Positions 42,401 through 64,000 of a stretch of 64,000 nt of DNA are shown one piece after another (the stretch's first letter is position 1; each line of letters opens with the position of its first letter). The notes beneath the pieces are model-generated. The model was not told where the DNA came from. It did no database searches and was given only the letters and a program-made list of their open reading frames with translations. Position numbers and translations under genes: made by a program. The DNA lies in the IMG/VR virus record IMGVR_UViG_3300046787_000200, positions 1-64,000 of that record, one strand, 5' to 3'.

Positions 42401-45400
42401 ATATTACAGGAAATATTGGAGCTGCCGGTGTAATATGTTATACAGGTGAAGTTGTCAACACTGCAGTTGTAACAATCGCATATCCTGGCATATTAGATAT
42501 AACTGCTACTGAGCGAACATCTAACTTTATAACAACACCGTTGTTACCAAGTGGTACTGCAGGAACTCAAGGTTTCTATGTTGATTTACCAGTATACTTT
42601 GTTGGCGATGTGTTTGGCGGTATCATTGAAAATGATACGTACTATATCACTACAATCATAGATAATGAAACATTTACTATATCTAAAACACAAGATCCAA
42701 TTATTTTAGACGTTACTGCTACTACCGGATCTACTGATACTGTAACAGTTTCTTCAACAATTGAATTAAATGTAAATGATCCTATTGTATTCACTGGAAC
42801 TACATTTGGTGATATAGTTGCCGGACAAGTTTATTACATTAGAAGTGTTGAAACCGGCACATCAATTACGATTGCCGAAGTATTGAACGGTGGTGCAGTC
42901 AACTTATCAAATGGTTCAGGTTCTTGTACATTAACTAACCAGAAAGATGTTGTTCAATTGACAACTGCTACTGGCTCTATGACAATGAACGTTGGCTTGC
43001 CAGTAAGTCCAGGACAAGTAACTGGACAGCAATTCACATTCTATAACACTGATGTGTCTATCGCTACTGGTGTGACTGGAACAAATGGCAATTTAGTTAC
43101 AAGAACAACTGTTGCTTCTACAAGCAATGGTGATTATTTGTTCTTAGATTATTTCAGTGGTGGATTGAAAAACATTTACAATAACTTACCATTTGAAGTG
43201 TCAGCTACAATAGGTGGACTATCAACCGGTACAACATATTATGTTGAATCAAATGGTGTATTGGCAGTAAATGTTTCTGGGTCAAGTTCTTCAACTAACG
43301 AATACACATTAGCATCTGGATCTGATACTACTGGCTTCTATATTGAAATGCCAGTCTCATTCAGCGGTGGCGTATTTGGTGGTGTGCAGGCCTTAGTAAC
43401 ATACTATATCAATAGCTATACATTAGGTGGTGATCAATTTACTATTACTGACGTATTAGGTGGAGTATTAGTTGATGACGTTGTACCAGGTGACTCATAC
43501 ACAATTTATGATTTAGGTACAACTACTCAATTAGAATGGAACACTATTGCAGGAACCAGTGCTATTGTTTATGTAGCAGGTGATAGAATCACTGCAGCCG
43601 CTACTGGTACTGGTACTGGTAGAGTATCTGCTGACTTTGTATTGACAAATGATGCAGGATCAATGACTATAACTGCTGATAATCCATATATTACTATTAA
43701 AGATGGTAGCGGAACATCAGTGACATTGACAGATGATGTAGCTGAAGTTACTGTAACACAAACTCCATTATCAGTACCAACATTCAATGTTGGGTATGTC
43801 TTAGGTGGATACACCGTTGAGATAGATGATATAGGTGAAGGTTATACATTCGACAACACGATTACTATTTCAGGAACTGATTTGGGTGGTACAAGCCCAG
43901 CAAATGATTTAGTACTAACTGTAGACGGTATCGATGTAATCATTCCAAATCCTAACACTACGTATGATTTCTTATTACCAGTGTCGTCAGATGGAACAAT
44001 TACAAGCTTTATATCTTCTGGTAATCCTGCAGATGTAGTGAACAACTATTACTTGAAAGTAATATCTGCGACAGAATGTGAAGTTTATTCTGATCCATTA
44101 ATGCAGATTCCCGTAAGTGGTATCGACTTCCCGTATGTTGCAGAAGATTATGCATTCTTACCAGAGCCATTCTACTTTGACCAATCGATTGTTAAGTATA
44201 ACAATCAAATATGGCAGTGTATTATTAGTAATAATGATAGCGAATTTATATTAGGTAAATGGGAACTATTAGACAGTGGTAGTAGAAAACTTAACGAGTT
44301 AGATCGTATTGTTGGCTATTACACACCAACAGTTAACATGCCAGGTGTAGATTTAACTCAACTAGTTACAGGTATTACATATCCAAATGGAACATATTTA
44401 GGTAATGCATTTGCACCTGAAGATCAATACACTTTAGACACTGATTTACAAGATCAACCGTTCTATCCAACTGAAGTAGATACTGTTTCTATTGTTTATG
44501 ATGGTTCACAATATGTAGCCGTTTCAAACACACCAGAATATTCTGCAACATTATTGAGTGCAGATACTGCCGAGTGGACAATTAACAAATTTGTTAATAT
44601 CCCAATACAAGCATCTGATATTGTGTATGCTGACGATAAATTTGTAATTGTGTGCGAAGATGCAACTACACCAATCTATACAAGTGATGACGGTATAACA
44701 TTCACTACAACAGGTGGTGCAACTGGATCACTAATAGTTGAATCAACATCGTTATCTAGCGTTGCACATAACGGCAGTGTTTGGGTAGCAGTTGGTGAAA
44801 ACATTGTGTCATCCGCTGATGCTATAACTTGGACAGAAACTGACTCATTTACGAATGGTCTTACTAATAACTTAAATGGTATTGCATATTCTAATTTGTC
44901 TAGCTATACAGGGTTTGTTGTAGTAGGTACAGGTCAAGAATTGATATCAGGTAATAATCAAACAGTAAGTGTTATCAAATTAAGTACTGATGGAAACACA
45001 TGGACAACATTACCAATCGTTTCTTATAACGGATTTAATGCTGTAACAATTGGTAATTCTAAATTATTAGCAGTAGGAGAAGACGGAGTAATCTACACTT
45101 CATTGAACGGTACTAATTGGGCAGGTGTAAATGAATCTAATGTTATCAGTGTAAATGCAAGCACCAATGTTATTAACGTAGGTAGCACAACTGGATTTGC
45201 AGTAAATGATATTGTTAGATTTACTACGTCATTTGATGTTGTTTCATCTTCAACAACGTATTATATTGTAGCTATCGTATCAACTACACAAGTACAAGTA
45301 AGTACAACGTTAGGTGGTTCAGCAATTACATTAACTGGTGTAAACCCAACGTCATTGACGTTCATGTATGAATATCCATCTGGTCAAAACTTGAATGATG

Positions 45401-48400
45401 TATTATATGCTAATTCATTGTTTGTAACAGTAGGTAACAGTGGTACTATTAAAACTAGTACTGACGGTTACACATGGACAACTGAAACATCAGGTACTAC
45501 TGAGAATCTAAATGGTATCACATACAATAGTGATTCAAGTGAATGGGTAGTAGTAGGTGATAACAACACTATTATTTCTAGTGCTGATGGAAGTACATGG
45601 ACAAGTTCATCATTGTTTGCACCCGAACCAACTGTATATAATGTACAGGGTGATCCATTCATGTCAGGTTATGGTCCTGAAGAATTAGTACCAGGTGTAG
45701 TAACTGATAATCTATCAATGATTGTTACAACACGTCCTGGAACAGATTGGGATGTTTCTATATACGGACATGCAGGTTTCAATGTAGTTTCTACTGAAGC
45801 AACTATGACTTCAACATCTATATCATTTGCAGGTATAGTAGAAAATCCTGCAAGTATGTCATTATTTGATGTAACTCCAACTACAAATACAAGTGTAAGA
45901 ATTTATGATTATACAGTAGATTGGGTAAACAAAGTAATCACATTAGATACTGCATTAGCAGTAGGTCATAAATTGCGTTTTGACTTGTATGAAGTAGGTA
46001 ACGGAGACCAATTAATTAAGTCAAACTCACAAGTTATCCCGTTCATTGACAATGAAACTACTGGTTTTGTTGAGATGCCATTGAATTGCAATTACTCTGC
46101 TAGCAGATTTAACGGTTCAGGCATTATAAGACCTAACACTGATCCTAAGCAAGTTACTGCTATTGAAACAGATGCGTTAGATAATGGTATCGTATGCGAT
46201 TCAGTATCATATTTTACAGTTAATGCACCTATAACATTCCAAGGTTCTGTATTTGGTGGTATAACTTCTGGTACTACTTATTGGGTAAAAACAGTAAGTA
46301 CTATTACTAACAAGATAACAATATCTGCTTCTGTCTCAGGTGGTATCGCTGGTCCAACTGTAGAATTAACATCTGATACAGGTACAATGTTAGTTAACAT
46401 CCAATCAACTAATGGTTTAGTTTGGACTGACCCGGTTGTAATACACAACGGCACACGCTTAGTTTTAGGTGAACAGGGTATTGTTTCAGAAACAATAAGT
46501 GGAACAAATACAATCATAGTTAATACTACAGACCATTATGATGTAGGCGACACTCTAGTATTCAGTGATGCTATTGAAACTGGCACGTTCATTGGTTGTG
46601 GATTGTCTGCACAAACAACGTATTACATTACATCATTGACAGGTACATCATTTACAGTATCTACTACATTAGGTGGTTCTAACGTTTCATTGAATGATGC
46701 AACTGGTATAGCATTATGCGTAACTAATGATTATGCAATAACAATTGCTGATGTAGGAACTTCTGCGAAAATGGTATTTGCAAATCAATATGATCAAGCT
46801 AATGATTTTGTTGTATTATCTATATTTGGTGAGACTGCACCGGAGCAATATGGATACACATTGCCTGAAGTAGAAGTATTCAATCTTACTTCAGGTTTAA
46901 CAGAATTCACATTGACTAATTACGTAGGTGGAACCAATGCAACTAATGCTATCGTTGAATATAATGGATTACGTCTAGTTGATATTTCAAACTATACGAT
47001 TGACTTCAACACAGCAACATTAAGTTTGAACTTTGGAACAACTGCAGGTGATACTGTCGCTGTAACCAGCTATAACTTAACAGATAGACAATATTTGCAT
47101 ACAACATACGGTGGTTCGTTCTCAGGTTCAAGCACTAATTCATTTACAATTAGTGATACTACACATGAGCCAGGGTATGATGCTGTTTTAACCGCAGGTG
47201 CATTCGTTGTAGGTACTGAATATGTTATTGAAACAATAGGAACTACTGACTTTACGTTGATTGGAGCTTCAAGTAATACAGTAGGTGTGGTGTTTACTGC
47301 AACTGGTGTAGGTTCAGGAACTGGAACTGCGGCAGTTGGTTGGGGCGAAACATACTCACCGGGCCCAGATTACCTAACATTAAGTGCGGGTAGCACAACT
47401 TCATTGAATATCAATGATGCCATAACATTTAGTGGAACAACATTTGGTGGAATTGTTGCTAACCAAACATATTATGTAGTAACTATTATAAGTGCAACTG
47501 AATTTGCAGTATCAGAAACACCCGGCGGAACAGCAGTTACTTTAACTACAGCTTCTGGCTCATTCTCTGGTATTACTAATCCTCCTACAGTAGCTCCAAT
47601 AACAGGAATTGATAATGAGATTATTGCACCAACTAATATAGGTGTTACTGATGTTGATTCAGTTGGTAATGTTATAACATGTACATCAACTACTGGTTTT
47701 AGTGCAGGACAACCAGTCATGTTTAAGAGTGCTACTCCTAACACACCGTTTGGTAATGTACTATGTGACGGCACAGTATACTATATTTCTAACCCAGTTG
47801 TTAGTGCTACTGAGTTCACTATATCAGAAACATCAGGTGGACCAGAGTTTGATCCAGGTACTGCTAGTGGGGCAATTGTAGCAGAAGTAGGTGGAAACCC
47901 AACAGTAACAATTACTACCGGCGTAGCACATAATTTAGTTGAAAATGATATTGTTAGAATTGACGGGACTATCGGTTCAACTCAATTGAACAACAATACA
48001 TATTATGCTAAGATTATCAATGCAACACAAATTGCATTGTATAATAGCGAGTATGACCCAACAGTTAATGCAGTTAACGATCCAGTAACAGTGGTATCTA
48101 ACTGGATTAGCGGTGGTTATGTATGGTTAGATAAGACATTCACGTTGATTACTGCGGTTGCAACAAACACAACCGCACCTAACTTAATTACAGTACCGGA
48201 CACGGGAGAATTTGTAATAGGAACTCCAATTATATTCACTGGTACTGACTTATTAGGTGGAATAGTTTCTGAAGTTACTGCAGGTAGCTTTGTCGCAGGA
48301 CGCACATATCAAATCAATAGCACAGGAACTACTGACTTCACACTAATCGGTGCATTGAATAACAATGCAGGAACTACATTTGTGGCTACAGATGTTGGAA

Positions 48401-52425: not shown

Positions 52426-52734
52426 ATGGATACCAAAACCTTAATCAGCGAGGCGAAAGCCAGATTTAATCACAACGCTGCCAAAGCCCAATTAAAAGAC
52501 AAATATGACGGTAAGCTTATTATAGCAGATCAAGGGGGACTTTGGAAAGCGACCCCTGAACTTATTTCTTTTCTTAATTCAGCGTCAGAAGATAACTTTG
52601 TAATACTAATTGATAACTTTGATAATCCGGTACAAGTTGACAGAGAAAAACTGTTAACAGTATTAAAAAGCACACATCAAAAAGTTATGCTTGAATGGCA
52701 TAAAGAATGGAAAGAACTAGAGTCAAAACGATGA
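52426..52734 (+). CDS. Hypothetical protein (possible fibre assembly chaperone)
   Basis: Strong AGGAG RBS; first gene after the fibre genes. Function is inferred from position only. Confidence 0.6.
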   Translation: MDTKTLISEAKARFNHNAAKAQLKDKYDGKLIIADQGGLWKATPELISFLNSASEDNFVILIDNFDNPVQVDREKLLTVLKSTHQKVMLEWHKEWKELESKR

Positions 52735-53534
52735 ATAGAGGTGCAATATTATTTGCGTTCAACTCACCAAAGTTTAACTACTATGAGATGGCAGTTGCAA
52801 CAGCAAAAAGAGTAAATCATTTCTTAGATATACCTGTTACTGTAGTAACGGATGAATCATCTATTTCTGATTCGGCATATCAATTTGATAAAACTATTAT
52901 CGTAGAACCTGATAAAAGCAATAGCAGAGATTGGGGAATGTGGATCAATAAAGGTCGATACCAAGCATATGAACTAAGTCCATATGATGAGACCTTATTA
53001 CTTGATACTGACTACATGGTCAACTCAAATAAGATATTAGATGTATTCAATTACTATGATGATTTTTGTTGCCATAATAAAACTAGTTTCTTAATGCAGC
53101 CGGGTCTACCACAAGAAGTATTAAGTGTGTATAGCTTTGATACATTATGGGCTACTGTAGTTGCATTTAAGAAATCTAATCGTACTAAACAAATCTTTGA
53201 ATGCTTAGAAATGGTTCAAAAGAATTTCGAACATTACAGCAACTTACATGGATTTGTTGCAGGTACCTTTAGAAATGATTACGCATTAACATTAGCACTT
53301 AGAATTGCTAATGGACATTCAAGTGTTAAGCAAGATTTCATACCTTGGAATCTTGTTCATTTAGGTCAAAAGAATGTGCATATCTATAGAAACAATGATG
53401 ATGAATTCAATACTGAGTACACAGTAATGTATGACAACTGGCAACGTGGTAAAATCAAAAAAGAATATATTACGATTAAAGATATGGATTTTCATGTAAT
53501 GAACAAACTTAATTTTATGGAGTTAATAGCATGA
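52731..53534 (+). CDS. GT-A fold glycosyltransferase (GT8/GT71-like), copy 1
   Basis: SPYDETLLLDTDY DxD motif. The start is probably the ATG at 52731 (ATGA overlap), not 52707. Confidence 0.7.
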   Translation: MNRGAILFAFNSPKFNYYEMAVATAKRVNHFLDIPVTVVTDESSISDSAYQFDKTIIVEPDKSNSRDWGMWINKGRYQAYELSPYDETLLLDTDYMVNSNKILDVFNYYDDFCCHNKTSFLMQPGLPQEVLSVYSFDTLWATVVAFKKSNRTKQIFECLEMVQKNFEHYSNLHGFVAGTFRNDYALTLALRIANGHSSVKQDFIPWNLVHLGQKNVHIYRNNDDEFNTEYTVMYDNWQRGKIKKEYITIKDMDFHVMNKLNFMELIA

Positions 53535-54304: not shown

Positions 54305-54624
54305 TACTTTGGGAACAGCCCCCATTAGAAAAGCCTGAATTCAGATTATACTATGATGACAAGGGTAAAGTAATATGTTACTCTTGTGAAAAGATTGAAG
54401 GTAATTACATCATCATCGATGCGGCAACATACGCTGCCGGCAGACCTGACATAAGAGTAATTGAAGGTAAGATATCTACTGCTATTCCTAGTTTAGTTGT
54501 TTCAAAATTAATGCCCAATGCAGAAGGTATTACGTGTACTGAAGAAGATATTAGTATTGTAGTTGATGACAAATACAAAGATAAAATTATTAAATGGAAG
54601 CTAAACACATATGAACTCGAATGA
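54292..54624 (+). CDS. Hypothetical protein
   Basis: 110-aa ORF overlapping both neighbours. Confidence 0.7.
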   Translation: MEHVILWEQPPLEKPEFRLYYDDKGKVICYSCEKIEGNYIIIDAATYAAGRPDIRVIEGKISTAIPSLVVSKLMPNAEGITCTEEDISIVVDDKYKDKIIKWKLNTYELE

Positions 54625-55564
54625 TATTATTGACGTTGCAGACTTAGATTGCATCTATCTAAGTTATGACGAGCCACAGAAAGAAGAATTCTGGCTAAAG
54701 ATTAAGAACATGGTGCCTTGGGCAAAACGTGTCGATGGCGTTAAAGGCAGTGATGCGGCACACAAAGCCGCCGGTGAAGCAAGTGACACAGAACGCTTTA
54801 TTCTAATTGATGGCGATAATATGCCAGAAGAAAGTTTCTTTAATATTCAATTAGACTTCACCGGGAAAGACGAATCATTTAAGAAAGCACAGTTTCGTTG
54901 GAAAGCAATCAACAACATCAACGGATTGCGTTACGGAAATGGTGGTATGAGTTCTTGGACTAAAGAATATGTAGCCAACATGAAAACACATGAACATCAA
55001 AAAGATGGTGATGTGTCACGTATTGCTGACTTCTGCATGGGCGGTGATGACAATTTGTATTGGGCTATGTGGGATTGTTATTCAACTACATATCCAAATA
55101 TGACACCATTCCAAGCTTGGCGTGCAGGTTTCCGTGAAGGTGTTAAGATGAGTTTAGATAGAGGTGCTCGTCCTACAGTAGATCAATTTAAAGAAACAGT
55201 AGCAAGTCGTAACTTAGATAACTTAACAATATGGCATAATGTTGGTGCAGATGTTGAAAACGGTGAGTGGGCTATATATGGTGCTCGTCTTGGTACATAT
55301 ATGACTATGCTTACAGAATGGGATCATACTAACGTTCAATGGTTTGATAACTATATCACATTGTGGGAAGAACATGTGAATAGAGATCCTGTACGTGAAT
55401 CAGCATTGCTAGGAGCCGCACTGAATAATAAGCTAGGACTACCGATGGCTACGTTAGATGGGTTACAAAGTAAGTTCTTTAAACGTCATTATGGCGCAGA
55501 CAAATACAATCGAGGACCTCTTGTAACAGAGATGGAAGTGATTCGTAAGATTGAGGGCTGGTGA
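54611..55564 (+). CDS. Glycosyltransferase-like protein (GT-A, DGD motif)
   Basis: IYLSYDEP...AAHKAA...RFILIDGDN...YGNGG pattern with a DxD motif after a hydrophobic strand. Confidence 0.5.
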   Translation: MNSNDIIDVADLDCIYLSYDEPQKEEFWLKIKNMVPWAKRVDGVKGSDAAHKAAGEASDTERFILIDGDNMPEESFFNIQLDFTGKDESFKKAQFRWKAINNINGLRYGNGGMSSWTKEYVANMKTHEHQKDGDVSRIADFCMGGDDNLYWAMWDCYSTTYPNMTPFQAWRAGFREGVKMSLDRGARPTVDQFKETVASRNLDNLTIWHNVGADVENGEWAIYGARLGTYMTMLTEWDHTNVQWFDNYITLWEEHVNRDPVRESALLGAALNNKLGLPMATLDGLQSKFFKRHYGADKYNRGPLVTEMEVIRKIEGW

Positions 55565-56169
55565 TGATTTGGAAAAATGTTTATAGTTCAGACCCGACTG
55601 ATACCAAAGAGGCTAGTGAATATTTGAATAAACTATATCCTTATCTAAAAATTTGCGAAAATAAGAAAATTTTAGAAATTGGACCATTTAATGGGACACA
55701 CACTCAAGTTGTCAAATCGTACAATCCAGAAAGTGTTACCCTAGTAGAATTATATGAACATGCACTAATCGCATTGAAACAAGATTATTCAGACTATGAA
55801 ATAGTAGAGAATGATATATTTCACTACCTAGAAAAACCGCGTGATTTTGATGTGGTATTATGTTGCGGAGTCCTATATCATTTACATGCACCTTTGTATC
55901 TATTAGAGTTAATAGTGAATAGAATTTCCCCTCAATTTGTGTGCTTAGAATCATATGACACTAGTTTACATGCACACCAAGAAGATGACAATACTCCAGG
56001 TGCAAGGCAAATAGTACCGGGTTGGAAATCATCTAATATATCAATTCAACTTCCTAAAGAAATAATAATCACTGCTATGCAAAATTTAGGATATAAATTA
56101 AATGTATATGATGATTCGTTGGTAAAATTTAAAAATAAACCTTTTTTCTGTGTGTTTGAAAAAGTATGA
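55561..56169 (+). CDS. Class I SAM-dependent methyltransferase
   Basis: ILEIGPFNG motif I, LVE acidic motif II, FDVVLCCGVLYHL motif IV. Confidence 0.85.
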   Translation: MMIWKNVYSSDPTDTKEASEYLNKLYPYLKICENKKILEIGPFNGTHTQVVKSYNPESVTLVELYEHALIALKQDYSDYEIVENDIFHYLEKPRDFDVVLCCGVLYHLHAPLYLLELIVNRISPQFVCLESYDTSLHAHQEDDNTPGARQIVPGWKSSNISIQLPKEIIITAMQNLGYKLNVYDDSLVKFKNKPFFCVFEKV

Positions 56170-57731
56170 GCGGAGAATACGATCAATTTGCTAGAGATAT
56201 GCGTGACCGCTTAAATGCAGTCAGTCCATCTCTATGTCTTGCTAAATGGCAACAAGTAAGTTTACACTTACCAAGTGGAATGACACAAAGTTGTTATCAC
56301 CCGCCTACACATAAGATTCCACTAGAACTATTGGAAACTAAACCTAGTGCATTACACAATACGCCAATTAAAATCTACGAGCGTAAACAGATGCTTGAGG
56401 GCAAAAGACCTGAAGGTTGTAGCTATTGTTGGAAAGTAGAAGATGCTCAAAGTGATGATCCTAAAGGTCATATGAGTGATAGACATTATCGTAGTAGCGA
56501 ATGGTGGAATGCACCCACGTTTGAAGAAGTAACTACTAATAAGTTTGATTATGATGTTACCCCACGCTATGTAGAAGTAAACTTCAATCAAGCATGTAAT
56601 TTCAAATGCATGTACTGTAGTCCTCACTTATCTACAAGTTGGGAAGAAGAAATTAGAAAACACGGACCTTATCCTCTAGCAACATTATCACATAATGATA
56701 TCGGTGCATTAGAGAATAAAGGTATGATGCCACTTAAAGTAGCAAACAAAGATAACCCATACGTTGAAGCATTTTGGAAATGGTTCCCTGAAATCTATCG
56801 TAAACTACGTGTATTCAGAATGACAGGTGGTGAGCCACTTATGGACAAAAATACATTCAAAGTGTTAGACTATGTGAACGAGAATCCTCACGGTCAGCTT
56901 GAGTTATCCATTACAAGCAATATGTGTCCTCCGGATCAGAAGTTATTTGATAAGTTTGTTGAGAAAGTCAAAGCAATTGAAACACTACGCACATACGAAG
57001 ATAAAGAAAATTTTAATGAGTTCAGTGGCAATCATTGGTATGTAGATAAAGGATTCAAACACTTTTGGTTATTTGTATCATTAGACGGCTTTGGTGAACA
57101 AGCTGAATATATGCGTACTGGTTTAGAGTTTGACCGTATGTTAAATAACGTTCGTACATTCTTACGTGAAACGAAATACAGTACAGTTAGCTTCATCAAT
57201 ACTTTTAACATCATGTCTATTCCTAGCTTACATAAGTTTTTAGAAATGGTACTAGAGTTGAGAGCAGAGTTCGGTGGTCGTAGTCAAGTTGAGTTTGAGA
57301 TTGCACCCGATCAGACTGACGTAGAGAAAGAAAACAACATTGTACATAAAGTTTATAAACAAAAGAAGTTCCAGCGTGTATTCTTTGATATTCCAATCTT
57401 AAGGTATCCACCATGGTTCAGTATTCAGAATGCAGGACAATATGGTATTGATGAAGTAGAACGTTGCTTGAAGTATATGGAAGATAATGTACAAGGTGAT
57501 GACTATTTGGAAACATTCGAGGGATTTAAACCGTATGAGATATTGAAAATTAAGCGAGACCTTGCTATAATGAAAGAATCTCTACCCCAAGATCAACTCT
57601 TACTAAATAAAAAGAACTTCTACATGTTCATTACAGAATATGATAGACGCAGGCAGACGAATTTTATGGAAACTTTCCCAGAACTAAAGAGTTACTGGAG
57701 AGAGTGTATCAAAGCACATACTAAACACTAA
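56166..57731 (+). CDS. Radical SAM protein with N-terminal twitch domain, copy 1
   Basis: CNFKCMYC and MTGGEP; N-terminal CLAKW...SCYHP...CSYC. Confidence 0.9.
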   Translation: MSGEYDQFARDMRDRLNAVSPSLCLAKWQQVSLHLPSGMTQSCYHPPTHKIPLELLETKPSALHNTPIKIYERKQMLEGKRPEGCSYCWKVEDAQSDDPKGHMSDRHYRSSEWWNAPTFEEVTTNKFDYDVTPRYVEVNFNQACNFKCMYCSPHLSTSWEEEIRKHGPYPLATLSHNDIGALENKGMMPLKVANKDNPYVEAFWKWFPEIYRKLRVFRMTGGEPLMDKNTFKVLDYVNENPHGQLELSITSNMCPPDQKLFDKFVEKVKAIETLRTYEDKENFNEFSGNHWYVDKGFKHFWLFVSLDGFGEQAEYMRTGLEFDRMLNNVRTFLRETKYSTVSFINTFNIMSIPSLHKFLEMVLELRAEFGGRSQVEFEIAPDQTDVEKENNIVHKVYKQKKFQRVFFDIPILRYPPWFSIQNAGQYGIDEVERCLKYMEDNVQGDDYLETFEGFKPYEILKIKRDLAIMKESLPQDQLLLNKKNFYMFITEYDRRRQTNFMETFPELKSYWRECIKAHTKH

Positions 57732-57740
57732 GGAAAATAA

Positions 57741-59267
57741 ATGGCAGGCAAAAGACACGAAGAAAGCTTCTCAGCATACAAAGCACGACTAATCGACCCA
57801 ATCAGCGATAGCTATTGTGCCGCTAAATGGCTTAATGCTACTATCTGGTTAGGTAACGGACAAACAACTAGTTGTCACCACCCATTAGGTCACCAGATTG
57901 ATGCTAATGAATTAGTTACTAACCCATCAGCGATTCACAATACACCGCACAAGAAGTACATGCGTAAGTTGATGCAAGAAGGTAAGCGTCCACAAGAATG
58001 TGAATACTGCTGGAAGATTGAAGATATCGGTCGTAACAACATCAGTGACCGTGTTTATAAAACTGCGGTGTTTGAAGAATCAGACATTCTACATACTGCT
58101 AAAGCAGATTGGCAAGAAAATACAATGTTGAAAACATTAGAAATTTCTTTTGACCGTACATGTAACTTTGCTTGCTCATACTGCAACCCATCATTCAGTA
58201 CTACATGGGTTAAAGATATTCACAAGTATGGTCCTTATCGTAATATTGATGGTGATGCACGTAGTCACTTCATTAACGAAGCTGACCATGCTAAACCTAT
58301 CCCGGATGATATCAATCCATATTCACAAGCGTTCTGGCGCTGGTGGGAAGAAGGACTTGCTGATAACTTAGAAGAAATTCGAATTACAGGTGGAGAACCA
58401 CTCATGGCTCCTGGCGTATGGAAGTTGTTTGAATGGTTCAGAGATAACCAAGAACGTGTAAAGAATCGTCCAGATGGTAAAGTATTGCGTTATGCAGTTA
58501 ATAGTAACTTAGTACCTAAGGATGAAATCATGGACAAACTAATTGAATTAAGTCACTATGTGCCATGGTTAGAAGTATACACAAGTTGTGAAGCTTTCGG
58601 TGCACATGCGGAATATATCCGTGATGGATTTGATTGGAACAAGTGGATTCATAACTTGCAACGATTGCATACTGAAGGTAATATTAAAAAGACACACATG
58701 ATGATGACTATCAATAGTTTGTGTTTGTCTAGTATTGTACAATTTATGGATCAGATGATGGAATTCAAAAAGATTCACAATACAACTTATCCTACAATGA
58801 GCTTGAACATTCTACGTTTCCCTAGCTTCCAGTCATGTGCTATGTTGCCAATGGATATTCGTCAGAAGTATGCAAATGAATTGCAAGTGTGGTTAGACGC
58901 ACAGATTGCAGCCGATTTCAGAACAACTGAAGGCGCACCTATGCTTATGAGTATTGAGCGTGAGCAGACACAACGTTTAATTGATTACCTTGACGTTGTT
59001 AAGACTCCTCACAAAAACGTGAAAGACATTGAACAGAACCGTAGAGACTTTAAACAATTCTATGCACAGTATGATGTACGTAGAGGTAAGAGTTTCCGTA
59101 ACACTTTCCCACCAGAGTTCGTTGCGTTCTATGACAGCATTCAAACTGAACTACCTACAGCGGATGAAATTATTACAGGTAATTATCGTGCAGGGGTTGA
59201 TATGATTCCAGATCATCCGCCTGAAGATCCAAGTAAGGATGTTTTTGTTAACCCAGACTTACAATGA
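57741..59267 (+). CDS. Radical SAM protein with N-terminal twitch domain, copy 2
   Basis: CNFACSYC and ITGGEP; N-terminal CAAKW...SCHHP...CEYC. Confidence 0.9.
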   Translation: MAGKRHEESFSAYKARLIDPISDSYCAAKWLNATIWLGNGQTTSCHHPLGHQIDANELVTNPSAIHNTPHKKYMRKLMQEGKRPQECEYCWKIEDIGRNNISDRVYKTAVFEESDILHTAKADWQENTMLKTLEISFDRTCNFACSYCNPSFSTTWVKDIHKYGPYRNIDGDARSHFINEADHAKPIPDDINPYSQAFWRWWEEGLADNLEEIRITGGEPLMAPGVWKLFEWFRDNQERVKNRPDGKVLRYAVNSNLVPKDEIMDKLIELSHYVPWLEVYTSCEAFGAHAEYIRDGFDWNKWIHNLQRLHTEGNIKKTHMMMTINSLCLSSIVQFMDQMMEFKKIHNTTYPTMSLNILRFPSFQSCAMLPMDIRQKYANELQVWLDAQIAADFRTTEGAPMLMSIEREQTQRLIDYLDVVKTPHKNVKDIEQNRRDFKQFYAQYDVRRGKSFRNTFPPEFVAFYDSIQTELPTADEIITGNYRAGVDMIPDHPPEDPSKDVFVNPDLQ

Positions 59268-60664
59268 CAAATAAAATAATGCCAATATGGGGAACGGATG
59301 CTAAACCAGATCCAAATAGCCCCAATAAAGTATTTTGTATGGCTCCGTGGACACATACCTACATTAGCCCACAAAGCGAACGTAGGATGTGCTGTGCATC
59401 ACGTGAAGAACATAGTTTTCAGAAACAATACATTGATAGTAGCAATGATGAAAAATATGGTGAAGTCAAAGAATCTAAAACGTCACTAGACGCATACAAG
59501 CCGGTCAGTTTGAAAGAACACTGGAATAGTGATTACATGAAAGATATTCGTGTAAAACTAATGCGCGGTGAAGAGATCCCTCAATGTGACGTATGTAATC
59601 ATAATCTGTTGATGGAGGGTGAAAGCTACCGCGGATGGTTTACTGGTGTATTGTTTAAAGACAAGATACAACAGGCATTTGACAGCACAGATGATACTGG
59701 TCACACAACAATGGAGCCTATCTCATTTGACTATCGATTTAGTAATCTATGCAACTTCAAATGTCGCATGTGTGGTGAGCAATTGTCCAGTACATGGGAA
59801 ACTGAAAAGAAAGTTCACAATATGTGGACTGAGAAGAATCAGCCCTTTATGGTTCCTGAAATAAAATCTGCAATGCAAGACTTTCAGCAGAACGTTGTTG
59901 AACCAGAGTTCCGTGATGCAGTAAGTCGTGGCATAGTTGAAGAAATGTATTGGGTTGGTGGTGAGCCATTGATGTATGATGTGCATTGGTGGACACTAGA
60001 AGAAATGCTAAAGAATGGCAGTGCTAAGAATTGCTATATGCGTTACAATAGTAACTTAAGTCGTGTACAATTTGGACAAAAGAACTTGTATGACTATCTA
60101 CCTCACTACAAAGATTGGATGATGTGTGCAAGTATTGATGGTACAGGTGAGATTGTAGAATACATCCGTACGGGTATTAAATGGGATAAATGGCTAGATA
60201 ACTTTAAACAAGGATTAGCATTACCCGGCGGCAAAGATAAGATGAAGTTAGACTTAACTATCACTGCCCCAGGAATGTTCTCGTTGAAAGAATTGTTTGA
60301 CTTAAGTATTGAGTTAGATGTTGAAATCATTACTAAGATTACATTTGCATTTCACCCTGATATCATGTGGAGTCCAACTAGTTGGCCACGTGAGATACTA
60401 AATGAAATGGTAGATGATATCATTAATTATTGTCAGCCAAGAGCTACATGGAAGCAACGTAGCTTTATTAGCAACTTACAGGCATTAAAAGATAGTCGCA
60501 AGACACATGAAGAAGAATGGCCAGATACATATAAAACAGCAAGATTGAATGGTAAACGTTGGGTTGAACATTTAGAAAAGATACGCGGTGATGAAAAAGT
60601 CACAATGCGTAATATATATAGTCGCAACCCTAAATTATTAACATGGTGGGATAGTATACAATGA
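59264..60664 (+). CDS. Radical SAM protein with N-terminal twitch domain, copy 3
   Basis: CNFKCRMC and WVGGEP; N-terminal CMAPW...MCC...CDVC. Confidence 0.9.
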   Translation: MTNKIMPIWGTDAKPDPNSPNKVFCMAPWTHTYISPQSERRMCCASREEHSFQKQYIDSSNDEKYGEVKESKTSLDAYKPVSLKEHWNSDYMKDIRVKLMRGEEIPQCDVCNHNLLMEGESYRGWFTGVLFKDKIQQAFDSTDDTGHTTMEPISFDYRFSNLCNFKCRMCGEQLSSTWETEKKVHNMWTEKNQPFMVPEIKSAMQDFQQNVVEPEFRDAVSRGIVEEMYWVGGEPLMYDVHWWTLEEMLKNGSAKNCYMRYNSNLSRVQFGQKNLYDYLPHYKDWMMCASIDGTGEIVEYIRTGIKWDKWLDNFKQGLALPGGKDKMKLDLTITAPGMFSLKELFDLSIELDVEIITKITFAFHPDIMWSPTSWPREILNEMVDDIINYCQPRATWKQRSFISNLQALKDSRKTHEEEWPDTYKTARLNGKRWVEHLEKIRGDEKVTMRNIYSRNPKLLTWWDSIQ

Positions 60665-61356
60665 GTAAAAATATTTTAGTAGTAGGTGGTGGCACACCGG
60701 GTAAGTTTGGAAATCAATTTGTTAAAAAAGCTAGAGATGATGGACATCGTGTAGTAAATTTCTCGCATAAGGATCATAATACTGGACATATAGACGATAG
60801 ACATATCAACTATAATGACATTAGACAAGTTAAAAATAAATGTGCAGAATTATCAACTGAAATGCCAGTAATTGATATTATCCTGTTCAACCAAAATGGA
60901 GCGGGATATCCCGGAACAGTTGAACAATTATTTAAAGAACCAAATTTACTTGAATATAATCAAACAATAACTAGAGCAGTAACTGTACCTCATCAGATTA
61001 TTGCATCGTTGTATAACAACTTAATCCCTGGTAGTAGAGTAGTATATATGGGTTCTACTATGTCATTCTTATACGAACGTGAAAATTACACAGAACATGT
61101 AGGCTACCCTAGTGCTAAATCATTTGCTATGCATTTAATATCAGCTATGGCAAAAGGTAGAACTAAAGAAATTACATTTAGTTGTATGTGTCCTTATTTC
61201 TTATATGATAAACCAGACTTGTATGAAAACATTTTTGACCAAACGTACAGCTACATCTTAACACATGATGATAGTTTTAATGGAAAAATAGTAAATCAAT
61301 TAAACGGCTTTGAGAATCCATACGTGCCGGGTAAAGTAACTTATGCAAAACAATGA
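60661..61356 (+). CDS. Short-chain dehydrogenase/reductase
   Basis: Rossmann ILVVGGGTPGKFG, ILFNQNG, catalytic Ser in YMGS, and YPSAK (YxxxK). Confidence 0.75.
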   Translation: MSKNILVVGGGTPGKFGNQFVKKARDDGHRVVNFSHKDHNTGHIDDRHINYNDIRQVKNKCAELSTEMPVIDIILFNQNGAGYPGTVEQLFKEPNLLEYNQTITRAVTVPHQIIASLYNNLIPGSRVVYMGSTMSFLYERENYTEHVGYPSAKSFAMHLISAMAKGRTKEITFSCMCPYFLYDKPDLYENIFDQTYSYILTHDDSFNGKIVNQLNGFENPYVPGKVTYAKQ

Positions 61357-62563
61357 TGACACATGGTGCGTATTGCCATGGTCACATCTATATGTAGGAC
61401 CTAATGGTAAAATTGCACCTTGCTGTGTAGGTAAAACATTGGGTGAGTACGGAGATACTACCTTAGAAGAAGCATGGAACAGTGATGCCATGAAACAATT
61501 ACGCATAGACATGACAAATGGCGTAAAAAATGATATATGTTCATCCTGCTATAAAAAAGAAGATATGGGATTTAAGTCAATGAGACAGAATTCCAATGTC
61601 ACAATGAAAGATGTTGCAGACGTAGTTAGGACAACCTCAAATAGTGATGGATCAATTGACGAATTTAAATTGTACTATTTAGATTTACGATTTAATAATC
61701 TTTGTAATTTTAAATGTAGAACATGTAATCCATTCTTTAGTAGTTCGGTTGCAGTTGAGCATATGCAAAACACCTCATTGAAAAAATTTCACAAAACGCC
61801 AGAACGTGGTATTATTCAAAACAACAATATACTTTCAGAAATAGAAAAACAATATCCCAATGTAACTAGAATATATTTTGCAGGTGGCGAGCCAATGATG
61901 CAAGAAGAACATTGGAACATTTTAAAGTATTATGTTGATAATGATACTGCTAAAAATGTAGGTCTAGTATATTCTACTAACACTAGTAGATTAACATATA
62001 AAACCAATTCAGTATTTGACTATTGGAAACACTTTAAAAGTGTACATGTACAAACAAGTATTGATGCTGAAGGTAAAAGAGCAGAATATTGGAGAGACGG
62101 TACTGTTTGGGAAGACATACTTACTAATATAAAACTTATTAAAGAAAGCAAAGTTCAATGGTCTATACATAGTGTAATCTCTTGGGCTAATGTTTATAGC
62201 TATGTAGAATTAGTTAAAACATTATTACAAGAAAAATTATCACTCGGGTATAATTTTACCATATGGTGCTTAGATGAAAGCCATGAATTTAACTTACAAG
62301 AATTACCTGACTTTAAAAAACAAGAAATAGCAAGTATGCTAGATACATTTATTGTAGAGTTAGAAGATGGTAAATTTGGTAGATATTTAGGTGAACCTGT
62401 AATAAAAACAAATATAGAAAATATTAAAATGTTTATGTTTGCTAAATCAATACCTATAAATAAAGAAAAATTTGAAAAACATTTCATACTAGATGGTATA
62501 AGAAATAAGGATTTCTTTGAGTACTTCCCCGAACATGAAAACATGAGAGAATATATACAATGA
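61343..62563 (+). CDS. Radical SAM protein with N-terminal twitch domain, copy 4
   Basis: CNFKCRTC and FAGGEP; N-terminal CVLPW...PCC...CSSC. Confidence 0.9.
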   Translation: MQNNDDTWCVLPWSHLYVGPNGKIAPCCVGKTLGEYGDTTLEEAWNSDAMKQLRIDMTNGVKNDICSSCYKKEDMGFKSMRQNSNVTMKDVADVVRTTSNSDGSIDEFKLYYLDLRFNNLCNFKCRTCNPFFSSSVAVEHMQNTSLKKFHKTPERGIIQNNNILSEIEKQYPNVTRIYFAGGEPMMQEEHWNILKYYVDNDTAKNVGLVYSTNTSRLTYKTNSVFDYWKHFKSVHVQTSIDAEGKRAEYWRDGTVWEDILTNIKLIKESKVQWSIHSVISWANVYSYVELVKTLLQEKLSLGYNFTIWCLDESHEFNLQELPDFKKQEIASMLDTFIVELEDGKFGRYLGEPVIKTNIENIKMFMFAKSIPINKEKFEKHFILDGIRNKDFFEYFPEHENMREYIQ

Positions 62564-63738
62564 GTAACACTCTATGCGTATTGCCCTGGATGCATTTAGC
62601 CACACACCCAAACGGTGGTGCAAGTCTTTGTTGTCGCAGTAATCACACTGATGCAATTAGTTGGGCAAAGAAAACAGATAGTCACAATCTAGTTATGCTA
62701 GATAATGATAGTGTTTCCGATATAATGAACAGCGACAAGTTTGTTGAAGTAAGGCAAGCTATGATTGATGGAAAACGTCCAATTGAATGTGAAGGATGTT
62801 GGAGTGATGAAGATAAAGGCATTAAAAGCAAACGACAATATGAGAATGAGCGTTGGGCACACATTATCCCTAAACTTGAAAAATCAGCGAAACTACAAGA
62901 CATTAATTTAATATATGTGGAACTACGTTTGGGTAATGTGTGCAACAATGCCTGCTTAACTTGTAACAGTTATAGCAGTACTAAGTGGTATCCAGATGAA
63001 AAGAAGATATCAAATGATTTACCTTGGTTTCAACTACGACCAATGGAAAACTTTAAGTGGTTTGAGAAAGAAGAATTCTACTATGACTTAGCAAACAAAA
63101 GTAAGTCTGTAGAAGAAATCTATATCAACGGTGGCGAACCTACAATGATTAAGGCTCACTTTGAATACTTAAAGCACTTGATTACATTGGGTACAGCACA
63201 GAATGTTCACTTAGTTTATAGTTTGAACATGATGGATATACCAGACAGATTGATTGAGTTGTGGAAAGATTTTAAACAAGTTACAGTTAATGCAAGCATT
63301 GATGATTTAGGTGAACGTAACTATTATATTCGATATCCAAGTAAGTGGGAAGAAACAGTTGCAAGTATAGATAAATTAAATAAACTATCTAATGTCAATT
63401 GGCATGTAACACAAACTGTTAGCATACTAAACATATATCATTTAGCAGAATTTGGACATTGGCTTGAGACAAACTACAACAAGACACCTCATCATAATTA
63501 TGTACTGTACCCTGATTATTTGAGCATTGCGGCATTGCCCGATTATTATAAAGAAGAATTACGTAGTCATTATTCAAATAGATTACATGAATGGCAACGT
63601 AAAGATTTGTTTAATAAATTGCATGAGCCTTACCAACCCGACTTGCTAAAGAAAGCAAAAGAGTTTATACTAGCAGTTGACAAAGCACGTGGATTAGATT
63701 ATAAAAACTATATACCGGAACTAAAAGACATACTATGA
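62560..63738 (+). CDS. Radical SAM protein with N-terminal twitch domain, copy 5
   Basis: CNNACLTC and INGGEP; N-terminal CVLPW...LCC...CEGC. Confidence 0.9.
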   Translation: MSNTLCVLPWMHLATHPNGGASLCCRSNHTDAISWAKKTDSHNLVMLDNDSVSDIMNSDKFVEVRQAMIDGKRPIECEGCWSDEDKGIKSKRQYENERWAHIIPKLEKSAKLQDINLIYVELRLGNVCNNACLTCNSYSSTKWYPDEKKISNDLPWFQLRPMENFKWFEKEEFYYDLANKSKSVEEIYINGGEPTMIKAHFEYLKHLITLGTAQNVHLVYSLNMMDIPDRLIELWKDFKQVTVNASIDDLGERNYYIRYPSKWEETVASIDKLNKLSNVNWHVTQTVSILNIYHLAEFGHWLETNYNKTPHHNYVLYPDYLSIAALPDYYKEELRSHYSNRLHEWQRKDLFNKLHEPYQPDLLKKAKEFILAVDKARGLDYKNYIPELKDIL

Positions 63739-64000
63739 TACCAATTATACCAGACAAAATTAAAGACTCATTCTGTTCAGCTAAGTGGCTGATGGCTACT
63801 ATGCACTTTGGTATGGGTGAAAATCATAGTTGCTATCACCCACCTATTCATCGCTGGAACTTAGAAGATGTAAAACGTGATCCTAGTATGCTACATAATA
63901 CACAGCATAAGATTGAACAACGCAGACAGATGATGAATGGCGAGAAGCCAAAAGAATGTTACTATTGCTTTGACATGGAAGCAATCAATCCAGATGTTAT
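63735..64000 (+). CDS. Radical SAM protein with N-terminal twitch domain, copy 6 (partial, runs off the right edge)
   Basis: Hand translation gives MIPIIPDKIKDSFCSAKWLMATMHFGMGENHSCYHPP...KPKECYYCF, the same twitch type as copies 1 and 2; ATGA overlap. Confidence 0.85.
   Translation, partial: MIPIIPDKIKDSFCSAKWLMATMHFGMGENHSCYHPPIHRWNLEDVKRDPSMLHNTQHKIEQRRQMMNGEKPKECYYCFDMEAINPDV

What the first reader, a model, noticed from the sequence alone, without database searches (positions are those of the whole stretch)
56166..64000. Radical SAM array has inverted architecture and two subtypes
Seen: in all six copies the auxiliary Cys cluster is N-terminal to the CxxxCxxC motif, whereas SPASM/twitch domains are normally C-terminal. 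Copies 1, 2 and 6 have C-x-AKW...SC(Y/H)HP...CxYC; copies 3, 4 and 5 have C-xx-PW...CC...CxxC. Most complete copies end with a D-x-x-R...F...FPE-like motif. The copies are very divergent, so this is an old expansion. From memory, an NCBIfam family of N-terminal-twitch radical SAM proteins of unknown function exists, mostly from uncultured sources. Inference: each paralogue acts at a different position or on a different sugar, or the two subtypes work as pairs.
Basis: partly seen in the sequence, partly recalled or inferred. Interest (0 to 1): 0.62.

Follow-up and report, generated by a model that had tools for sequence, protein, structure and literature searches.

The report
Phage array of N-terminal-twitch radical SAM enzymes
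A 352-kb freshwater jumbo phage carries, next to its tail-fibre genes, a tandem array of 13 very divergent radical SAM enzymes whose extra iron-sulfur domain sits in front of the catalytic core instead of behind it; they belong to a catalogued but uncharacterised family that is probably used to remodel sugars.

Summary
All six ORFs in 56166-64000 match NCBIfam NF033640 (N_Twi_rSAM). The five complete copies score 290-350 bits against a cut-off of 170. The window cuts the array: in the 352,012-bp virus record it runs to 76621 and holds 13 N-terminal-twitch copies plus one canonical copy with a C-terminal SPASM/twitch domain.

Four N-terminal Cys are invariant in all 13 copies. A profile of that domain alone finds only the twitch domain of BtrN among solved structures.

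The two subtypes are real. With the N-terminal domain removed, the single-Cys "SC[YH]H" type forms a clade (99/98 support) seen so far only in phages. The "CC" type is basal and also occurs in bacteria.

Each paralogue has its own orthologues in related phage contigs (dN/dS about 0.03-0.1), so the expansion is old and maintained.

Function is inferred, not shown. Two bacterial members lie in polysaccharide clusters, and one of them is fused to a glycosyltransferase. The phage array is flanked by methyltransferase, SDR, carbamoyltransferase and GT-A-like genes. I therefore favour radical tailoring of a glycan. Obligate pairing of the two subtypes is not supported.

The parts
52707..53534 (+). 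275-aa ORF, probable GT-A-type nucleotide-diphospho-sugar transferase, upstream of the array
   Evidence: No Pfam or NCBIfam hit. The nearest ESM Atlas clusters are viral 'nucleotide-diphospho-sugar transferase' clusters (score 0.97, 192 of 256 features), some with PF03407, PF01501 or PF11051. This is a lead only.
54611..55564 (+). 317-aa conserved ORF that travels with the radical SAM gene; possibly a GT-A or nucleotidyltransferase fold
   Evidence: It is 39% identical to RsoM2USA_350, which lies directly upstream of that phage's type-A radical SAM gene. More than 8000 metagenomic homologues exist, and the top 120 are 82-97% identical. The AF2 model is poor (pLDDT 61). Its N-terminal half matches GT-A and nucleotidyltransferase folds only weakly, at Z 5.5-7.2. 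A related domain ends the 1427-aa protein at 79029-83312.
55561..56169 (+). SAM-dependent methyltransferase (class I, NodS-like), overlapping the start of copy 1 by 4 nt
   Evidence: Pfam Methyltransf_11 reaches 25.2 bits (cut-off 21.2) and NodS 25.0 bits (cut-off 24). NCBIfam gives weak hits that include a pseudaminic-acid-associated methylase.
56166..57731 (+). R01, N-twitch radical SAM, type A (521 aa)
   Evidence: NF033640 at 290.8 bits, E 1.8e-86. N-terminal Cys at 24, 43, 85, 88; CxxxCxxC at 144. It has an orthologue in RsoM2USA at 34% identity.
57741..59267 (+). R02, N-twitch radical SAM, type A (508 aa)
   Evidence: NF033640 at 295.1 bits. N-terminal Cys at 26, 45, 87, 90; CxxxCxxC at 141. 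It groups with RsoM2USA_202.
59264..60664 (+). R03, N-twitch radical SAM, type B (466 aa)
   Evidence: NF033640 at 311 bits. Pfam SPASM at 25-112 lies ahead of Radical_SAM at 158-315. N-terminal Cys at 25, 43, 44, 108, 111.
60661..61356 (+). Short-chain dehydrogenase/reductase-like ORF (231 aa) embedded in the array
   Evidence: Pfam adh_short at E 1.1e-5 and 25.4 bits, just under the 26.6 cut-off. NCBIfam gives weak SDR hits.
61343..62563 (+). R04, N-twitch radical SAM, type B (406 aa); a variable member of the array
   Evidence: NF033640 at 337.2 bits. SPASM at 9-70 with E 1.1e-11, ahead of Radical_SAM at 118-272. It has no close orthologue in the related contig L018.
62560..63738 (+). R05, N-twitch radical SAM, type B (392 aa); the copy that was modelled
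   Evidence: NF033640 at 350.5 bits. The AF2 model has pLDDT 92.9 and pTM 0.88. The best structural matches are BlsE, anSME, viperin, SkfB and MoaA, tied at Z about 12. There are 1738 homologues at E<=1e-5.
63735..64000 (+). R06, N-twitch radical SAM, type A, cut by the window end (full gene 63735-65021, 428 aa, in the parent record)
   Evidence: The 88-aa stub matches NF033640 at E 2.2e-15. The full gene scores 284 bits. N-terminal Cys at 14, 33, 75, 78. The array continues beyond the window: R07 65012-66202, R08 66247-67536, R09 67549-68730, R10 68740-70056, R11 70049-71362, R12 71362-72615, R13 (canonical, C-terminal SPASM) 72615-73787, R14 75272-76621.

Best explanation
The six ORFs are the first part of a 20-kb, tightly packed, co-directional array in a 352-kb freshwater jumbo myovirus. 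The array holds 13 paralogous radical SAM enzymes of the NCBIfam family N_Twi_rSAM. It also holds one canonical radical SAM/SPASM enzyme, an SDR and three GDSL-motif ORFs. It is flanked by a methyltransferase, a carbamoyltransferase and GT-A-like proteins, and it lies directly downstream of the baseplate and giant-fibre genes.

Shown: each enzyme has the CxxxCxxC and GGEP radical SAM core. In front of the core, each has a BtrN-like twitch domain with four invariant Cys in the pattern C-x18-C-x26..63-C-x2-C. That is enough for one auxiliary cluster, not the two of a full SPASM domain.

Inferred mechanism: the core [4Fe-4S] cluster cleaves SAM to a 5'-deoxyadenosyl radical, which abstracts a hydrogen from a sugar carbon. 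The fully Cys-ligated auxiliary cluster, held beside the active site by the N-terminal domain, takes up or relays the electron. The net result would be a dehydrogenation, an epimerisation or a related radical rearrangement, as in BtrN and other twitch enzymes.

Inferred role: the paralogues tailor different residues or positions of a phage-made glycan. The glycan would sit either on the virion fibres or on the infected cell's surface polysaccharide. The methyl, carbamoyl, acyl and redox enzymes of the same cluster would add further decorations. Type B is the ancestral form, shared with bacterial polysaccharide loci. Type A is a derived, phage-borne clade.
For: Family and architecture. NF033640 hits over the cut-off for 12 copies, with the 13th at 163.6 bits. 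SPASM precedes Radical_SAM in the Pfam hits. C6, C25, C77, C80, C128, C132, C135 and GGEP are invariant. A profile of the N-terminal domain alone hits only BtrN's twitch in the PDB, at E 1.9e-4 with the Cys columns aligned. The same twitch sequence sits at the C-terminus of a canonical Planctomycetota enzyme. The AF2 model is confident and compact, with pLDDT 92.9 and pTM 0.88.

Maintained paralogues. Each copy has its own orthologues in related viral contigs. dN/dS is roughly 0.03-0.1, with dS saturated.

Link to glycans. A bona fide bacterial member (376 bits) lies between GT2 genes in a Wzm/Wzt polysaccharide cluster. It groups with the phage type-B copies. A second member (177.8 bits) is a single 853-aa fusion of twitch, radical SAM and GT4/GT1 glycosyltransferase domains. 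It lies among GT2, GT4, polysaccharide deacetylase and CBM genes.

Phage neighbours. NodS-like methyltransferase and SDR. NodU/CmcH carbamoyltransferase at E 1e-46. A GT-A-like 275-aa ORF and the 317-aa ORF. An NDP-sugar epimerase/dehydratase and a DegT aminotransferase sit beside two further radical SAM genes at 96-100 kb.

Prior description. Glycosyltransferases and variable radical SAM cassettes have been described in the tail-fibre 'host recognition cluster' of pelagimyophages (PMC7029224). The genome also encodes two A-type Fe-S carrier proteins, echoing PMC5332604.
Against: No substrate, product or cluster content has been measured for any member of the family. The structural and sequence neighbours of the core do not discriminate between substrates: peptide maturases (SkfB, TigE, CteB, anSME) score as well as the sugar and nucleotide enzymes (BlsE, viperin, MoaA). 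No Pfam GT1, GT2 or GT8 domain is found anywhere in the phage genome. The GT-like nature of the upstream ORFs rests on a weak fold match to a low-confidence model and on language-model look-alikes. The three 'GDSL' ORFs are called from motifs seen by eye only; Pfam and NCBIfam give nothing for them. A third bacterial locus has a mixed context of FGE-sulfatase-like, class-III aminotransferase and TIR genes. The bacterial sample covers one phylum only.
Confidence: 0.5

Rival explanations
1. The enzymes modify proteins or peptides, in the manner of RiPP maturases. For example, they could cross-link or epimerise residues of the giant fibre (6291 aa), of the low-complexity fibre proteins upstream, or of the 1427-aa repeat protein downstream. 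Each paralogue would recognise a different motif.
For: The best sequence and fold neighbours of the core include the peptide maturases TigE/8vpo (E 2.5e-14), SkfB, CteB, SuiB and anSME. The array adjoins structural genes. A protein with about 15 internal repeats lies just downstream. Some bacterial relatives carry TPR domains, which bind proteins.
Against: No Pfam or NCBIfam scan reported an RRE/PqqD-like peptide-recognition domain; the N-terminus is occupied by the twitch domain. There is no room for precursor genes: all intergenic gaps in the array are 84 bp or less. Bacterial members sit in polysaccharide clusters, and one is fused to a glycosyltransferase. The neighbouring tailoring genes (carbamoyltransferase, NodS-like methyltransferase, SDR) are typical of sugar chemistry.
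Confidence: 0.2
2. The cluster makes a free small molecule, such as an aminocyclitol, an aminoglycoside-like pseudo-oligosaccharide or a modified nucleotide sugar, rather than decorating a polymer. The radical SAM enzymes would be successive steps of one or several such pathways.
For: The twitch domain resembles that of BtrN, an aminoglycoside pathway dehydrogenase. Carbamoyltransferase, methyltransferase, SDR and, further on, 4,6-dehydratase-type and DegT aminotransferase genes are the usual aminoglycoside or deoxysugar tool kit. A class-III aminotransferase lies between two bacterial relatives.
Against: Thirteen radical steps are far more than any known sugar pathway uses. No scaffold-forming enzyme (such as a DOI synthase) was seen in the ORFs scanned. 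The bacterial contexts are Wzm/Wzt-type polymer export and glycosyltransferase fusion. The position beside the tail fibres suggests a surface structure.
Confidence: 0.12
3. The enzymes act on nucleotides or on the phage DNA, either in hypermodification of bases or of sugars attached to DNA, or in viperin-like nucleotide chemistry for or against host defence.
For: There are weak hits to viperin and MoaA models. Radical SAM enzymes take part in some phage DNA hypermodification pathways (from my own knowledge). Thymidylate synthase lies at 95201-96100.
Against: The viperin model scores 17-33 bits against a cut-off of 180. The ThyA hit is full length at 356 bits, as expected of an ordinary thymidylate synthase, and it lies 20 kb away. 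The bacterial contexts are polysaccharide loci.
Confidence: 0.07
4. One reading: type A and type B proteins form obligate heterodimers, so the array encodes A/B pairs.
For: A and B genes are adjacent with overlapping stop and start codons at three conserved junctions (R02/R03, R05/R06, R11/R12).
Against: The numbers are unequal: 5 type A against 8 type B. Nearly all genes of the array overlap or abut, so adjacency is not specific. RsoM2USA has two type-A genes at separate loci and no type B was found there. All bacterial relatives examined are type B alone. The complex prediction of R05 with R06 gave no verdict and is not evidence either way.
Confidence: 0.08

Closest known systems
NCBIfam NF033640, N_Twi_rSAM (twitch domain-containing radical SAM protein)
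   Same: Twelve copies score above the curated cut-off and one scores just below it, with matches along the whole model (positions 1-398). They share the same domain order (twitch, then radical SAM core, then a helical C-terminal region with the D-x-x-R...F...P-E motif).
   Different: The family is a sequence-defined subfamily. I found no published biochemistry for it: no paper in the library names it. New here are a 13-fold tandem expansion in one phage genome and a split into a phage-borne type-A clade and a type-B grade.
BtrN (2-deoxy-scyllo-inosamine dehydrogenase of butirosin biosynthesis; PDB 4m7s, 4m7t)
   Same: The auxiliary-cluster domain is homologous, at E 1.9e-4 for the N-terminal profile alone. 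The four Cys and the intervening helix (the '...I.N.dkf...Rk.m..G...C..C' region) align. Both have a single auxiliary cluster site, that is a twitch rather than a SPASM domain. BtrN acts on a sugar-like substrate (from my own knowledge).
   Different: BtrN's twitch follows the radical SAM core, whereas here it precedes it. The core is no closer to BtrN than to other twitch/SPASM enzymes. Here there is an extra conserved C-terminal helical region. The substrate is unknown.
Canonical radical SAM/SPASM maturases (anSME, SkfB, CteB, SuiB, TigE)
   Same: The partial TIM-barrel core is shared, at Z 11-12.5, with E 2.5e-14 to TigE. Pfam SPASM matches the Cys domain. One gene of the array itself (R13, 72615-73787) has this canonical order.
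   Different: The canonical enzymes have an N-terminal RRE and a C-terminal seven-Cys SPASM domain with CX2CX5CX3C, which binds two clusters (PMC10878394). The phage copies have no RRE and no CX2CX5CX3C, carry only 4-5 Cys, and place the domain at the N-terminus.
Radical SAM cassettes in the tail-fibre 'host recognition cluster' of pelagimyophages, and the T4-like marine viral genome with 12 radical SAM genes
   Same: These are also large T4-type aquatic phages in which glycosyltransferases and variable numbers of radical SAM genes sit in the hypervariable region beside the tail fibres (PMC7029224). Many radical SAM genes occur together with phage-encoded Fe-S assembly proteins (PMC5332604). 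Both features hold here.
   Different: Those papers did not define the family, the inverted architecture or the subtypes. I did not test whether their genes belong to NF033640. The present phage belongs to a different lineage: its capsid protein is 66% identical to those of Vibrio phage 2.275.O and Pseudomonas phage PA5oct.

Membership tests
NCBIfam NF033640 N_Twi_rSAM | Whole-protein HMM score at or above the curated cut-off of 170 bits | tested here: met
   In-window complete copies score 290.8, 295.1, 311.0, 337.2 and 350.5 bits. In the six-frame search of the whole record, 12 places are over the cut-off. R07 scores 163.6 bits, just under it, and R13 scores 43 bits, so it is not a member.
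NCBIfam NF033640 N_Twi_rSAM | Twitch-type Cys domain placed N-terminal to the CxxxCxxC radical SAM motif | tested here: met
   There are four invariant Cys upstream of the CxxxCxxC motif in all 13 copies. Pfam SPASM lies ahead of Radical_SAM. The domain shows homology to the BtrN twitch.
Radical SAM superfamily (PF04055) | CxxxCxxC cluster motif together with the GGE-type SAM-binding motif in a partial TIM barrel | tested here: met
   C128, C132, C135 and G191-G192-E193-P194 are invariant. PF04055 finds 16 places in the genome. The AF2 core matches radical SAM structures at Z about 12.
Radical SAM superfamily (PF04055) | Reductive cleavage of SAM by a bound [4Fe-4S] cluster | not testable with these tools
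   This needs anaerobic reconstitution, EPR or Mossbauer spectroscopy, and a 5'-deoxyadenosine assay.
Full SPASM domain (two auxiliary clusters) | Seven Cys including the CX2CX5CX3C motif | tested here: not met
   Only 4 (type A) or 5 (type B) Cys precede the core, and no Cys follows the CxxC within the domain. The motif definition is taken from PMC10878394. The domain is therefore a twitch, not a SPASM domain.
BtrN-type radical SAM dehydrogenases | Twitch domain with four Cys fully ligating one auxiliary [4Fe-4S] cluster | tested here: inconclusive
   Sequence homology and Cys alignment are met. Ligation and cluster type cannot be tested here.
BtrN-type radical SAM dehydrogenases | Twitch domain C-terminal to the core; oxidation of a secondary alcohol of an aminocyclitol | tested here: not met
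   The domain order is reversed. The chemistry is untested. These enzymes may work like BtrN, but they are not members of its family.
RiPP radical SAM maturases | RRE (PqqD-like) leader-binding domain and an adjacent precursor peptide gene | tested here: not met
   The Pfam and NCBIfam scans reported no RRE. The intergenic gaps in the array are 84 bp or less, so no separate small gene fits. A distant precursor is not excluded.
Viperin-like antiviral radical SAM (NF038283) | HMM score at or above 180 bits | tested here: not met
   The scores are 17-33 bits.

The most novel reading that the evidence does not exclude
The array is a phage-encoded combinatorial 'radical glycan editing' system. A dozen twitch-first radical SAM enzymes would each carry out a different C-H-activating step (oxidation, epimerisation, or C-C or C-X bond formation) on a polysaccharide displayed on the virion's giant fibres or on the infected cell. 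Copy gain and loss would tune host recognition or exclusion of competing phages. This would add a new reaction class to polysaccharide biology, and it would give a function to a family that also occurs, fused to a glycosyltransferase, in bacteria.
Probability: 0.3. Interest if true: 0.82.

Novelty: new member of a known kind. Interest (0 to 1): 0.6.

Why it matters
Radical SAM enzymes with auxiliary clusters are best known for peptide maturation and for a few small-molecule sugar pathways. Here an uncharacterised family is expanded 13-fold beside the tail fibres of an abundant freshwater jumbo phage lineage. Each copy is conserved under purifying selection. In bacteria the same family is embedded in polysaccharide loci, and one member is fused to a glycosyltransferase. 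That gives a concrete and testable lead to radical chemistry on glycans, and to how large phages remodel their own surface or their host's surface. It also provides a natural circular permutation of the twitch/core arrangement, which is useful for understanding how the auxiliary cluster is positioned. The practical entry point is a cultivable relative, Ralstonia phage RsoM2USA, which has only two copies.

Tried and rejected
1. The search for related loci with the 13-paralogue alignment failed because no conserved 7-10 column stretch exists. A four-member alignment against genome contigs found only canonical C-terminal SPASM/twitch domains. This was useful only as evidence for the permutation.
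3. Complex prediction on R05 plus R06 was first busy and then returned no verdict, with score 0.00. This is not evidence for or against binding.
4. An hhalign comparison of R13's C-terminal domain with the type-B N-terminal domains aligned only the 15-residue '...G...PCC' motif (E 0.064). That is not significant, so I make no claim that R13 is the direct donor.
5. Foldseek and VIA-align could not separate sugar-acting from peptide-acting relatives; all are tied near Z 12.
6. The structure of the 317-aa ORF came out with low confidence (pLDDT 61), and its fold matches are below Z 8.
7. PDB sequence searches for the three upstream ORFs gave nothing.
8. Literature searches for the family name, for 'N-terminal twitch/SPASM' and for phage radical SAM glycan work gave no characterisation. 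The Grell et al. twitch review is not held.
9. Reads: contigs about 85-90% alike from a marine metatranscriptome cover parts of R01-R03. These are relatives, and the library may contain DNA, so transcription is not shown.
10. The listing of cluster members gave only 'hypothetical' and generic names.
11. The large representative search (search of protein representatives) was deliberately not used, because the family scans had settled membership.

Full report
WHAT IS THERE.
The window is the first 64 kb of a 352,012-bp IMG/VR virus record that CheckV rates as complete. Between 56166 and 64000 there are six co-oriented ORFs with a CxxxCxxC motif at residues 121-163. An SDR-like ORF at 60661-61356 sits between the third and fourth. 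All six match NCBIfam NF033640, 'twitch domain-containing radical SAM protein' (N_Twi_rSAM). The five complete copies score 290-350 bits against a curated cut-off of 170. The sixth is cut by the window end and matches with its first 88 residues.

THE ARRAY IS LARGER THAN THE WINDOW SHOWS.
A six-frame search of the whole record finds 12 places over the cut-off and one just under it (163.6 bits), all between 56.2 and 76.6 kb. I call the ORFs R01-R14: R01 56166, R02 57741, R03 59264, R04 61343, R05 62560, R06 63735, R07 65012, R08 66247, R09 67549, R10 68740, R11 70049, R12 71362, R13 72615, R14 75272.
- R13 is the exception. Its CxxxCxxC is at residue 22 and a Pfam SPASM hit lies at 284-350, which is the canonical order.
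- Genes overlap or are separated by at most 84 bp.
- Two more radical SAM genes of another kind lie at 98561-100514, giving 16 radical SAM genes in the genome.

ARCHITECTURE.
- In copies 3-5, Pfam places SPASM (PF13186) at residues 6-112 and Radical_SAM after it.
- Across the 13 N-twitch paralogues, which are only 17-47% identical, the invariant residues include four N-terminal Cys (C6, C25, C77, C80 in R05), the three core Cys, GGEP, and an Arg in the C-terminal motif.
- In a 74-sequence alignment with orthologues, D374, R377 and P386 of the 'D-x-x-R...F...P-E' motif are conserved at 90% or more.
- No CX2CX5CX3C motif follows the CxxC, so the domain can hold one auxiliary cluster. It is a twitch, not a full SPASM domain (motif definition in PMC10878394).
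- A profile of the N-terminal domain alone finds a single significant relative among all solved structures: the C-terminal twitch of BtrN (E 1.9e-4). The Cys and the helix between them align.
- A canonical Planctomycetota enzyme carries the same sequence pattern at its C-terminus.
- The AF2 model of R05 is confident and compact (pLDDT 92.9, pTM 0.88). It shows a beta-hairpin between the first two Cys and helices around the CxxC.
- Its core matches BlsE, anSME, viperin, SkfB and MoaA at Z about 12, all tied.
I could not inspect coordinates, so the distance between the two cluster sites is not measured.

TWO SUBTYPES.
- Type A (C...SC[YH]H...CxxC, four Cys): R01, R02, R06, R12, R14.
- Type B (C...CC...CxxC, five Cys): R03, R04, R05, R07-R11. 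R07 and R09 have a shortened linker.
- The second C of 'CC' aligns with the single C of type A.
- Trees were built only from the core and C-terminal region, with the trait's own domain removed. They recover type A as one clade with 99/98 and 99/99 support. Type B is a basal, unresolved grade.
- Both copies in Ralstonia phage RsoM2USA are type A, and one groups with R02.
- All six bacterial relatives examined are type B.

AGE AND SELECTION.
- Related viral contigs carry 9-15 copies each, in the same order.
- Most paralogues have an orthologue at 84-95% amino-acid identity in the nearest contigs. dN/dS is roughly 0.03-0.1; dS is saturated, so these values are rough.
- R04, R07 and R08 lack close orthologues in one relative, so copy content varies.
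- Long inter-paralogue branches and short orthologue branches show an old, maintained expansion.

THE PHAGE.
- The capsid, portal, baseplate wedge and hub are T4-like. The capsid protein is 66% identical to those of Vibrio phage 2.275.O and Pseudomonas phage PA5oct.
- The array follows the baseplate genes, a 6291-aa ORF and fibre-like ORFs.
- Near-identical DNA occurs in freshwater, estuary and other aquatic metagenomes from 11 studies.
- Two A-type Fe-S carrier genes are present. No flavodoxin was found.

WHAT THE ENZYMES ACT ON (INFERENCE).
The fold does not settle the substrate. Context does better.
(a) In a sample of 301 Planctomycetota genomes, two have members over the cut-off and six have relatives at E<=1e-25.
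- One member (376 bits) lies between GT2 genes in a cluster with Wzm, Wzt and a polysaccharide deacetylase. In the tree it sits among the phage type-B copies.
- The other (177.8 bits) is an 853-aa fusion of twitch, radical SAM and GT4/GT1 glycosyltransferase domains. It lies among GT2, GT4, deacetylase and carbohydrate-binding genes.
- A third locus, with sub-cut-off relatives, is mixed.
(b) In the phage, the array is flanked by or interleaved with the following genes:
- a NodS-like methyltransferase and an SDR;
- a NodU/CmcH carbamoyltransferase;
- three ORFs with GDSL-like N-terminal motifs, seen by eye only;
- a 275-aa ORF whose Atlas look-alikes are nucleotide-diphospho-sugar transferases;
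- a 317-aa ORF that is 39% identical to the gene directly upstream of the RsoM2USA radical SAM gene, and whose N-terminal half weakly resembles GT-A or nucleotidyltransferase folds.
(c) An NDP-sugar epimerase/dehydratase and a DegT aminotransferase lie next to the other two radical SAM genes.
(d) Pelagimyophage 'host recognition clusters' beside the tail fibres were reported to hold glycosyltransferases and variable radical SAM cassettes (PMC7029224).
Against this, Pfam GT1, GT2 and GT8 models find nothing in the phage, and peptide maturases are equally close in fold.
I therefore put about 0.5 on glycan tailoring. I put 0.2 on protein or peptide modification, 0.12 on a free small molecule, and less than 0.1 on nucleotide or DNA chemistry.

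MECHANISM PROPOSED.
Shown: the motifs for a SAM-binding [4Fe-4S] cluster and for one four-Cys auxiliary site.
Inferred from what is established for BtrN and other twitch/SPASM enzymes: a 5'-deoxyadenosyl radical abstracts a substrate hydrogen, and the auxiliary cluster accepts or relays the electron. The outcome would be a dehydrogenation, an epimerisation or a related reaction. The conserved C-terminal helical region with the D-x-x-R...P-E motif is a candidate substrate-binding lid.

THE PAIRING IDEA.
The numbers are unequal (5 type A against 8 type B). Type A occurs alone in RsoM2USA and type B alone in bacteria, which argues against obligate A/B pairs. The complex prediction gave no verdict and is not used as evidence.

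LIMITS AND COMPLIANCE.
- No alternative genetic code was needed.
- The costly representative search was not used.
- Coordinates beyond 64000 are those of the parent record, which is in register with the window.

Noticed in passing
window 30487-49362 (+): There is a single 6291-aa ORF between the baseplate wedge gene and the fibre-like ORFs. It is presumably a giant fibre or other structural protein, and it is a possible acceptor of whatever the downstream cluster makes.
   Followed up: no
parent record 79029-83312 (L013:15029-19312, +): A 1427-aa protein carries about 15 internal repeats of a 'FD(F/Y)SW.PD...P.IY.FG.QW' unit. Its C-terminal domain is related to the 317-aa ORF at 54611-55564 (BLASTP E 1e-8). 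It has no Pfam match.
   Followed up: partly
window 54611-55564 (+): The 317-aa ORF of unknown function has more than 8000 metagenomic homologues, and the best 120 are 82-97% identical. That is far more conserved than the radical SAM genes beside it. It is syntenic with RsoM2USA_350.
   Followed up: partly
parent record 96350-100514 (L014:12350-16514, +): An NDP-sugar epimerase/dehydratase (E 5e-44) and a DegT/DnrJ/EryC1 aminotransferase (E 1e-37) are followed by two tandem radical SAM genes of 330 and 334 aa. These belong to a different kind, with a Cys-rich C-terminus and weak viperin and BlsE model hits. Together they look like a second, smaller sugar module.
   Followed up: partly
parent record 86249-87133 (L014:2249-3133, +): The phage encodes a Gram-negative porin homologue (Pfam Porin_4, E 1.4e-22). 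Nearby are a MoxR-type AAA ATPase and a DUF2201 metallopeptidase/VWA pair (87985-90610), and a GH113-like glycoside hydrolase (91956-93158).
   Followed up: no
parent record 139714-140016 and 275742-276053 (+): There are two A-type Fe-S cluster carrier genes (PF01521, E 1e-21 and 5e-20) in a genome with 16 radical SAM genes. No flavodoxin was found.
   Followed up: partly
parent record 73784-75263 and 76706-77518 (+): Three ORFs of 249, 248 and 270 aa have GDS(F)- or GCSF-type N-terminal motifs suggestive of SGNH/GDSL esterases or acyltransferases. They have no Pfam or NCBIfam hit. They interrupt the array before R14 and precede the carbamoyltransferase at 77515-79020.
   Followed up: partly
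L043:7818-10379 (-), Planctomycetota genome G072: A bacterial 853-aa protein fuses an N-terminal twitch, a radical SAM core and a GT4/GT1 glycosyltransferase. Next to it, a 245-aa SPASM-only ORF and a 288-aa radical-SAM-only ORF look like a split or frameshifted second copy.
   Followed up: partly
window 56166-60000: Contigs about 85-90% identical to R01-R03 occur in a marine metatranscriptomic library and in a freshwater library labelled RNA-Seq. They are relatives rather than this phage, and transcription is not shown.
   Followed up: partly
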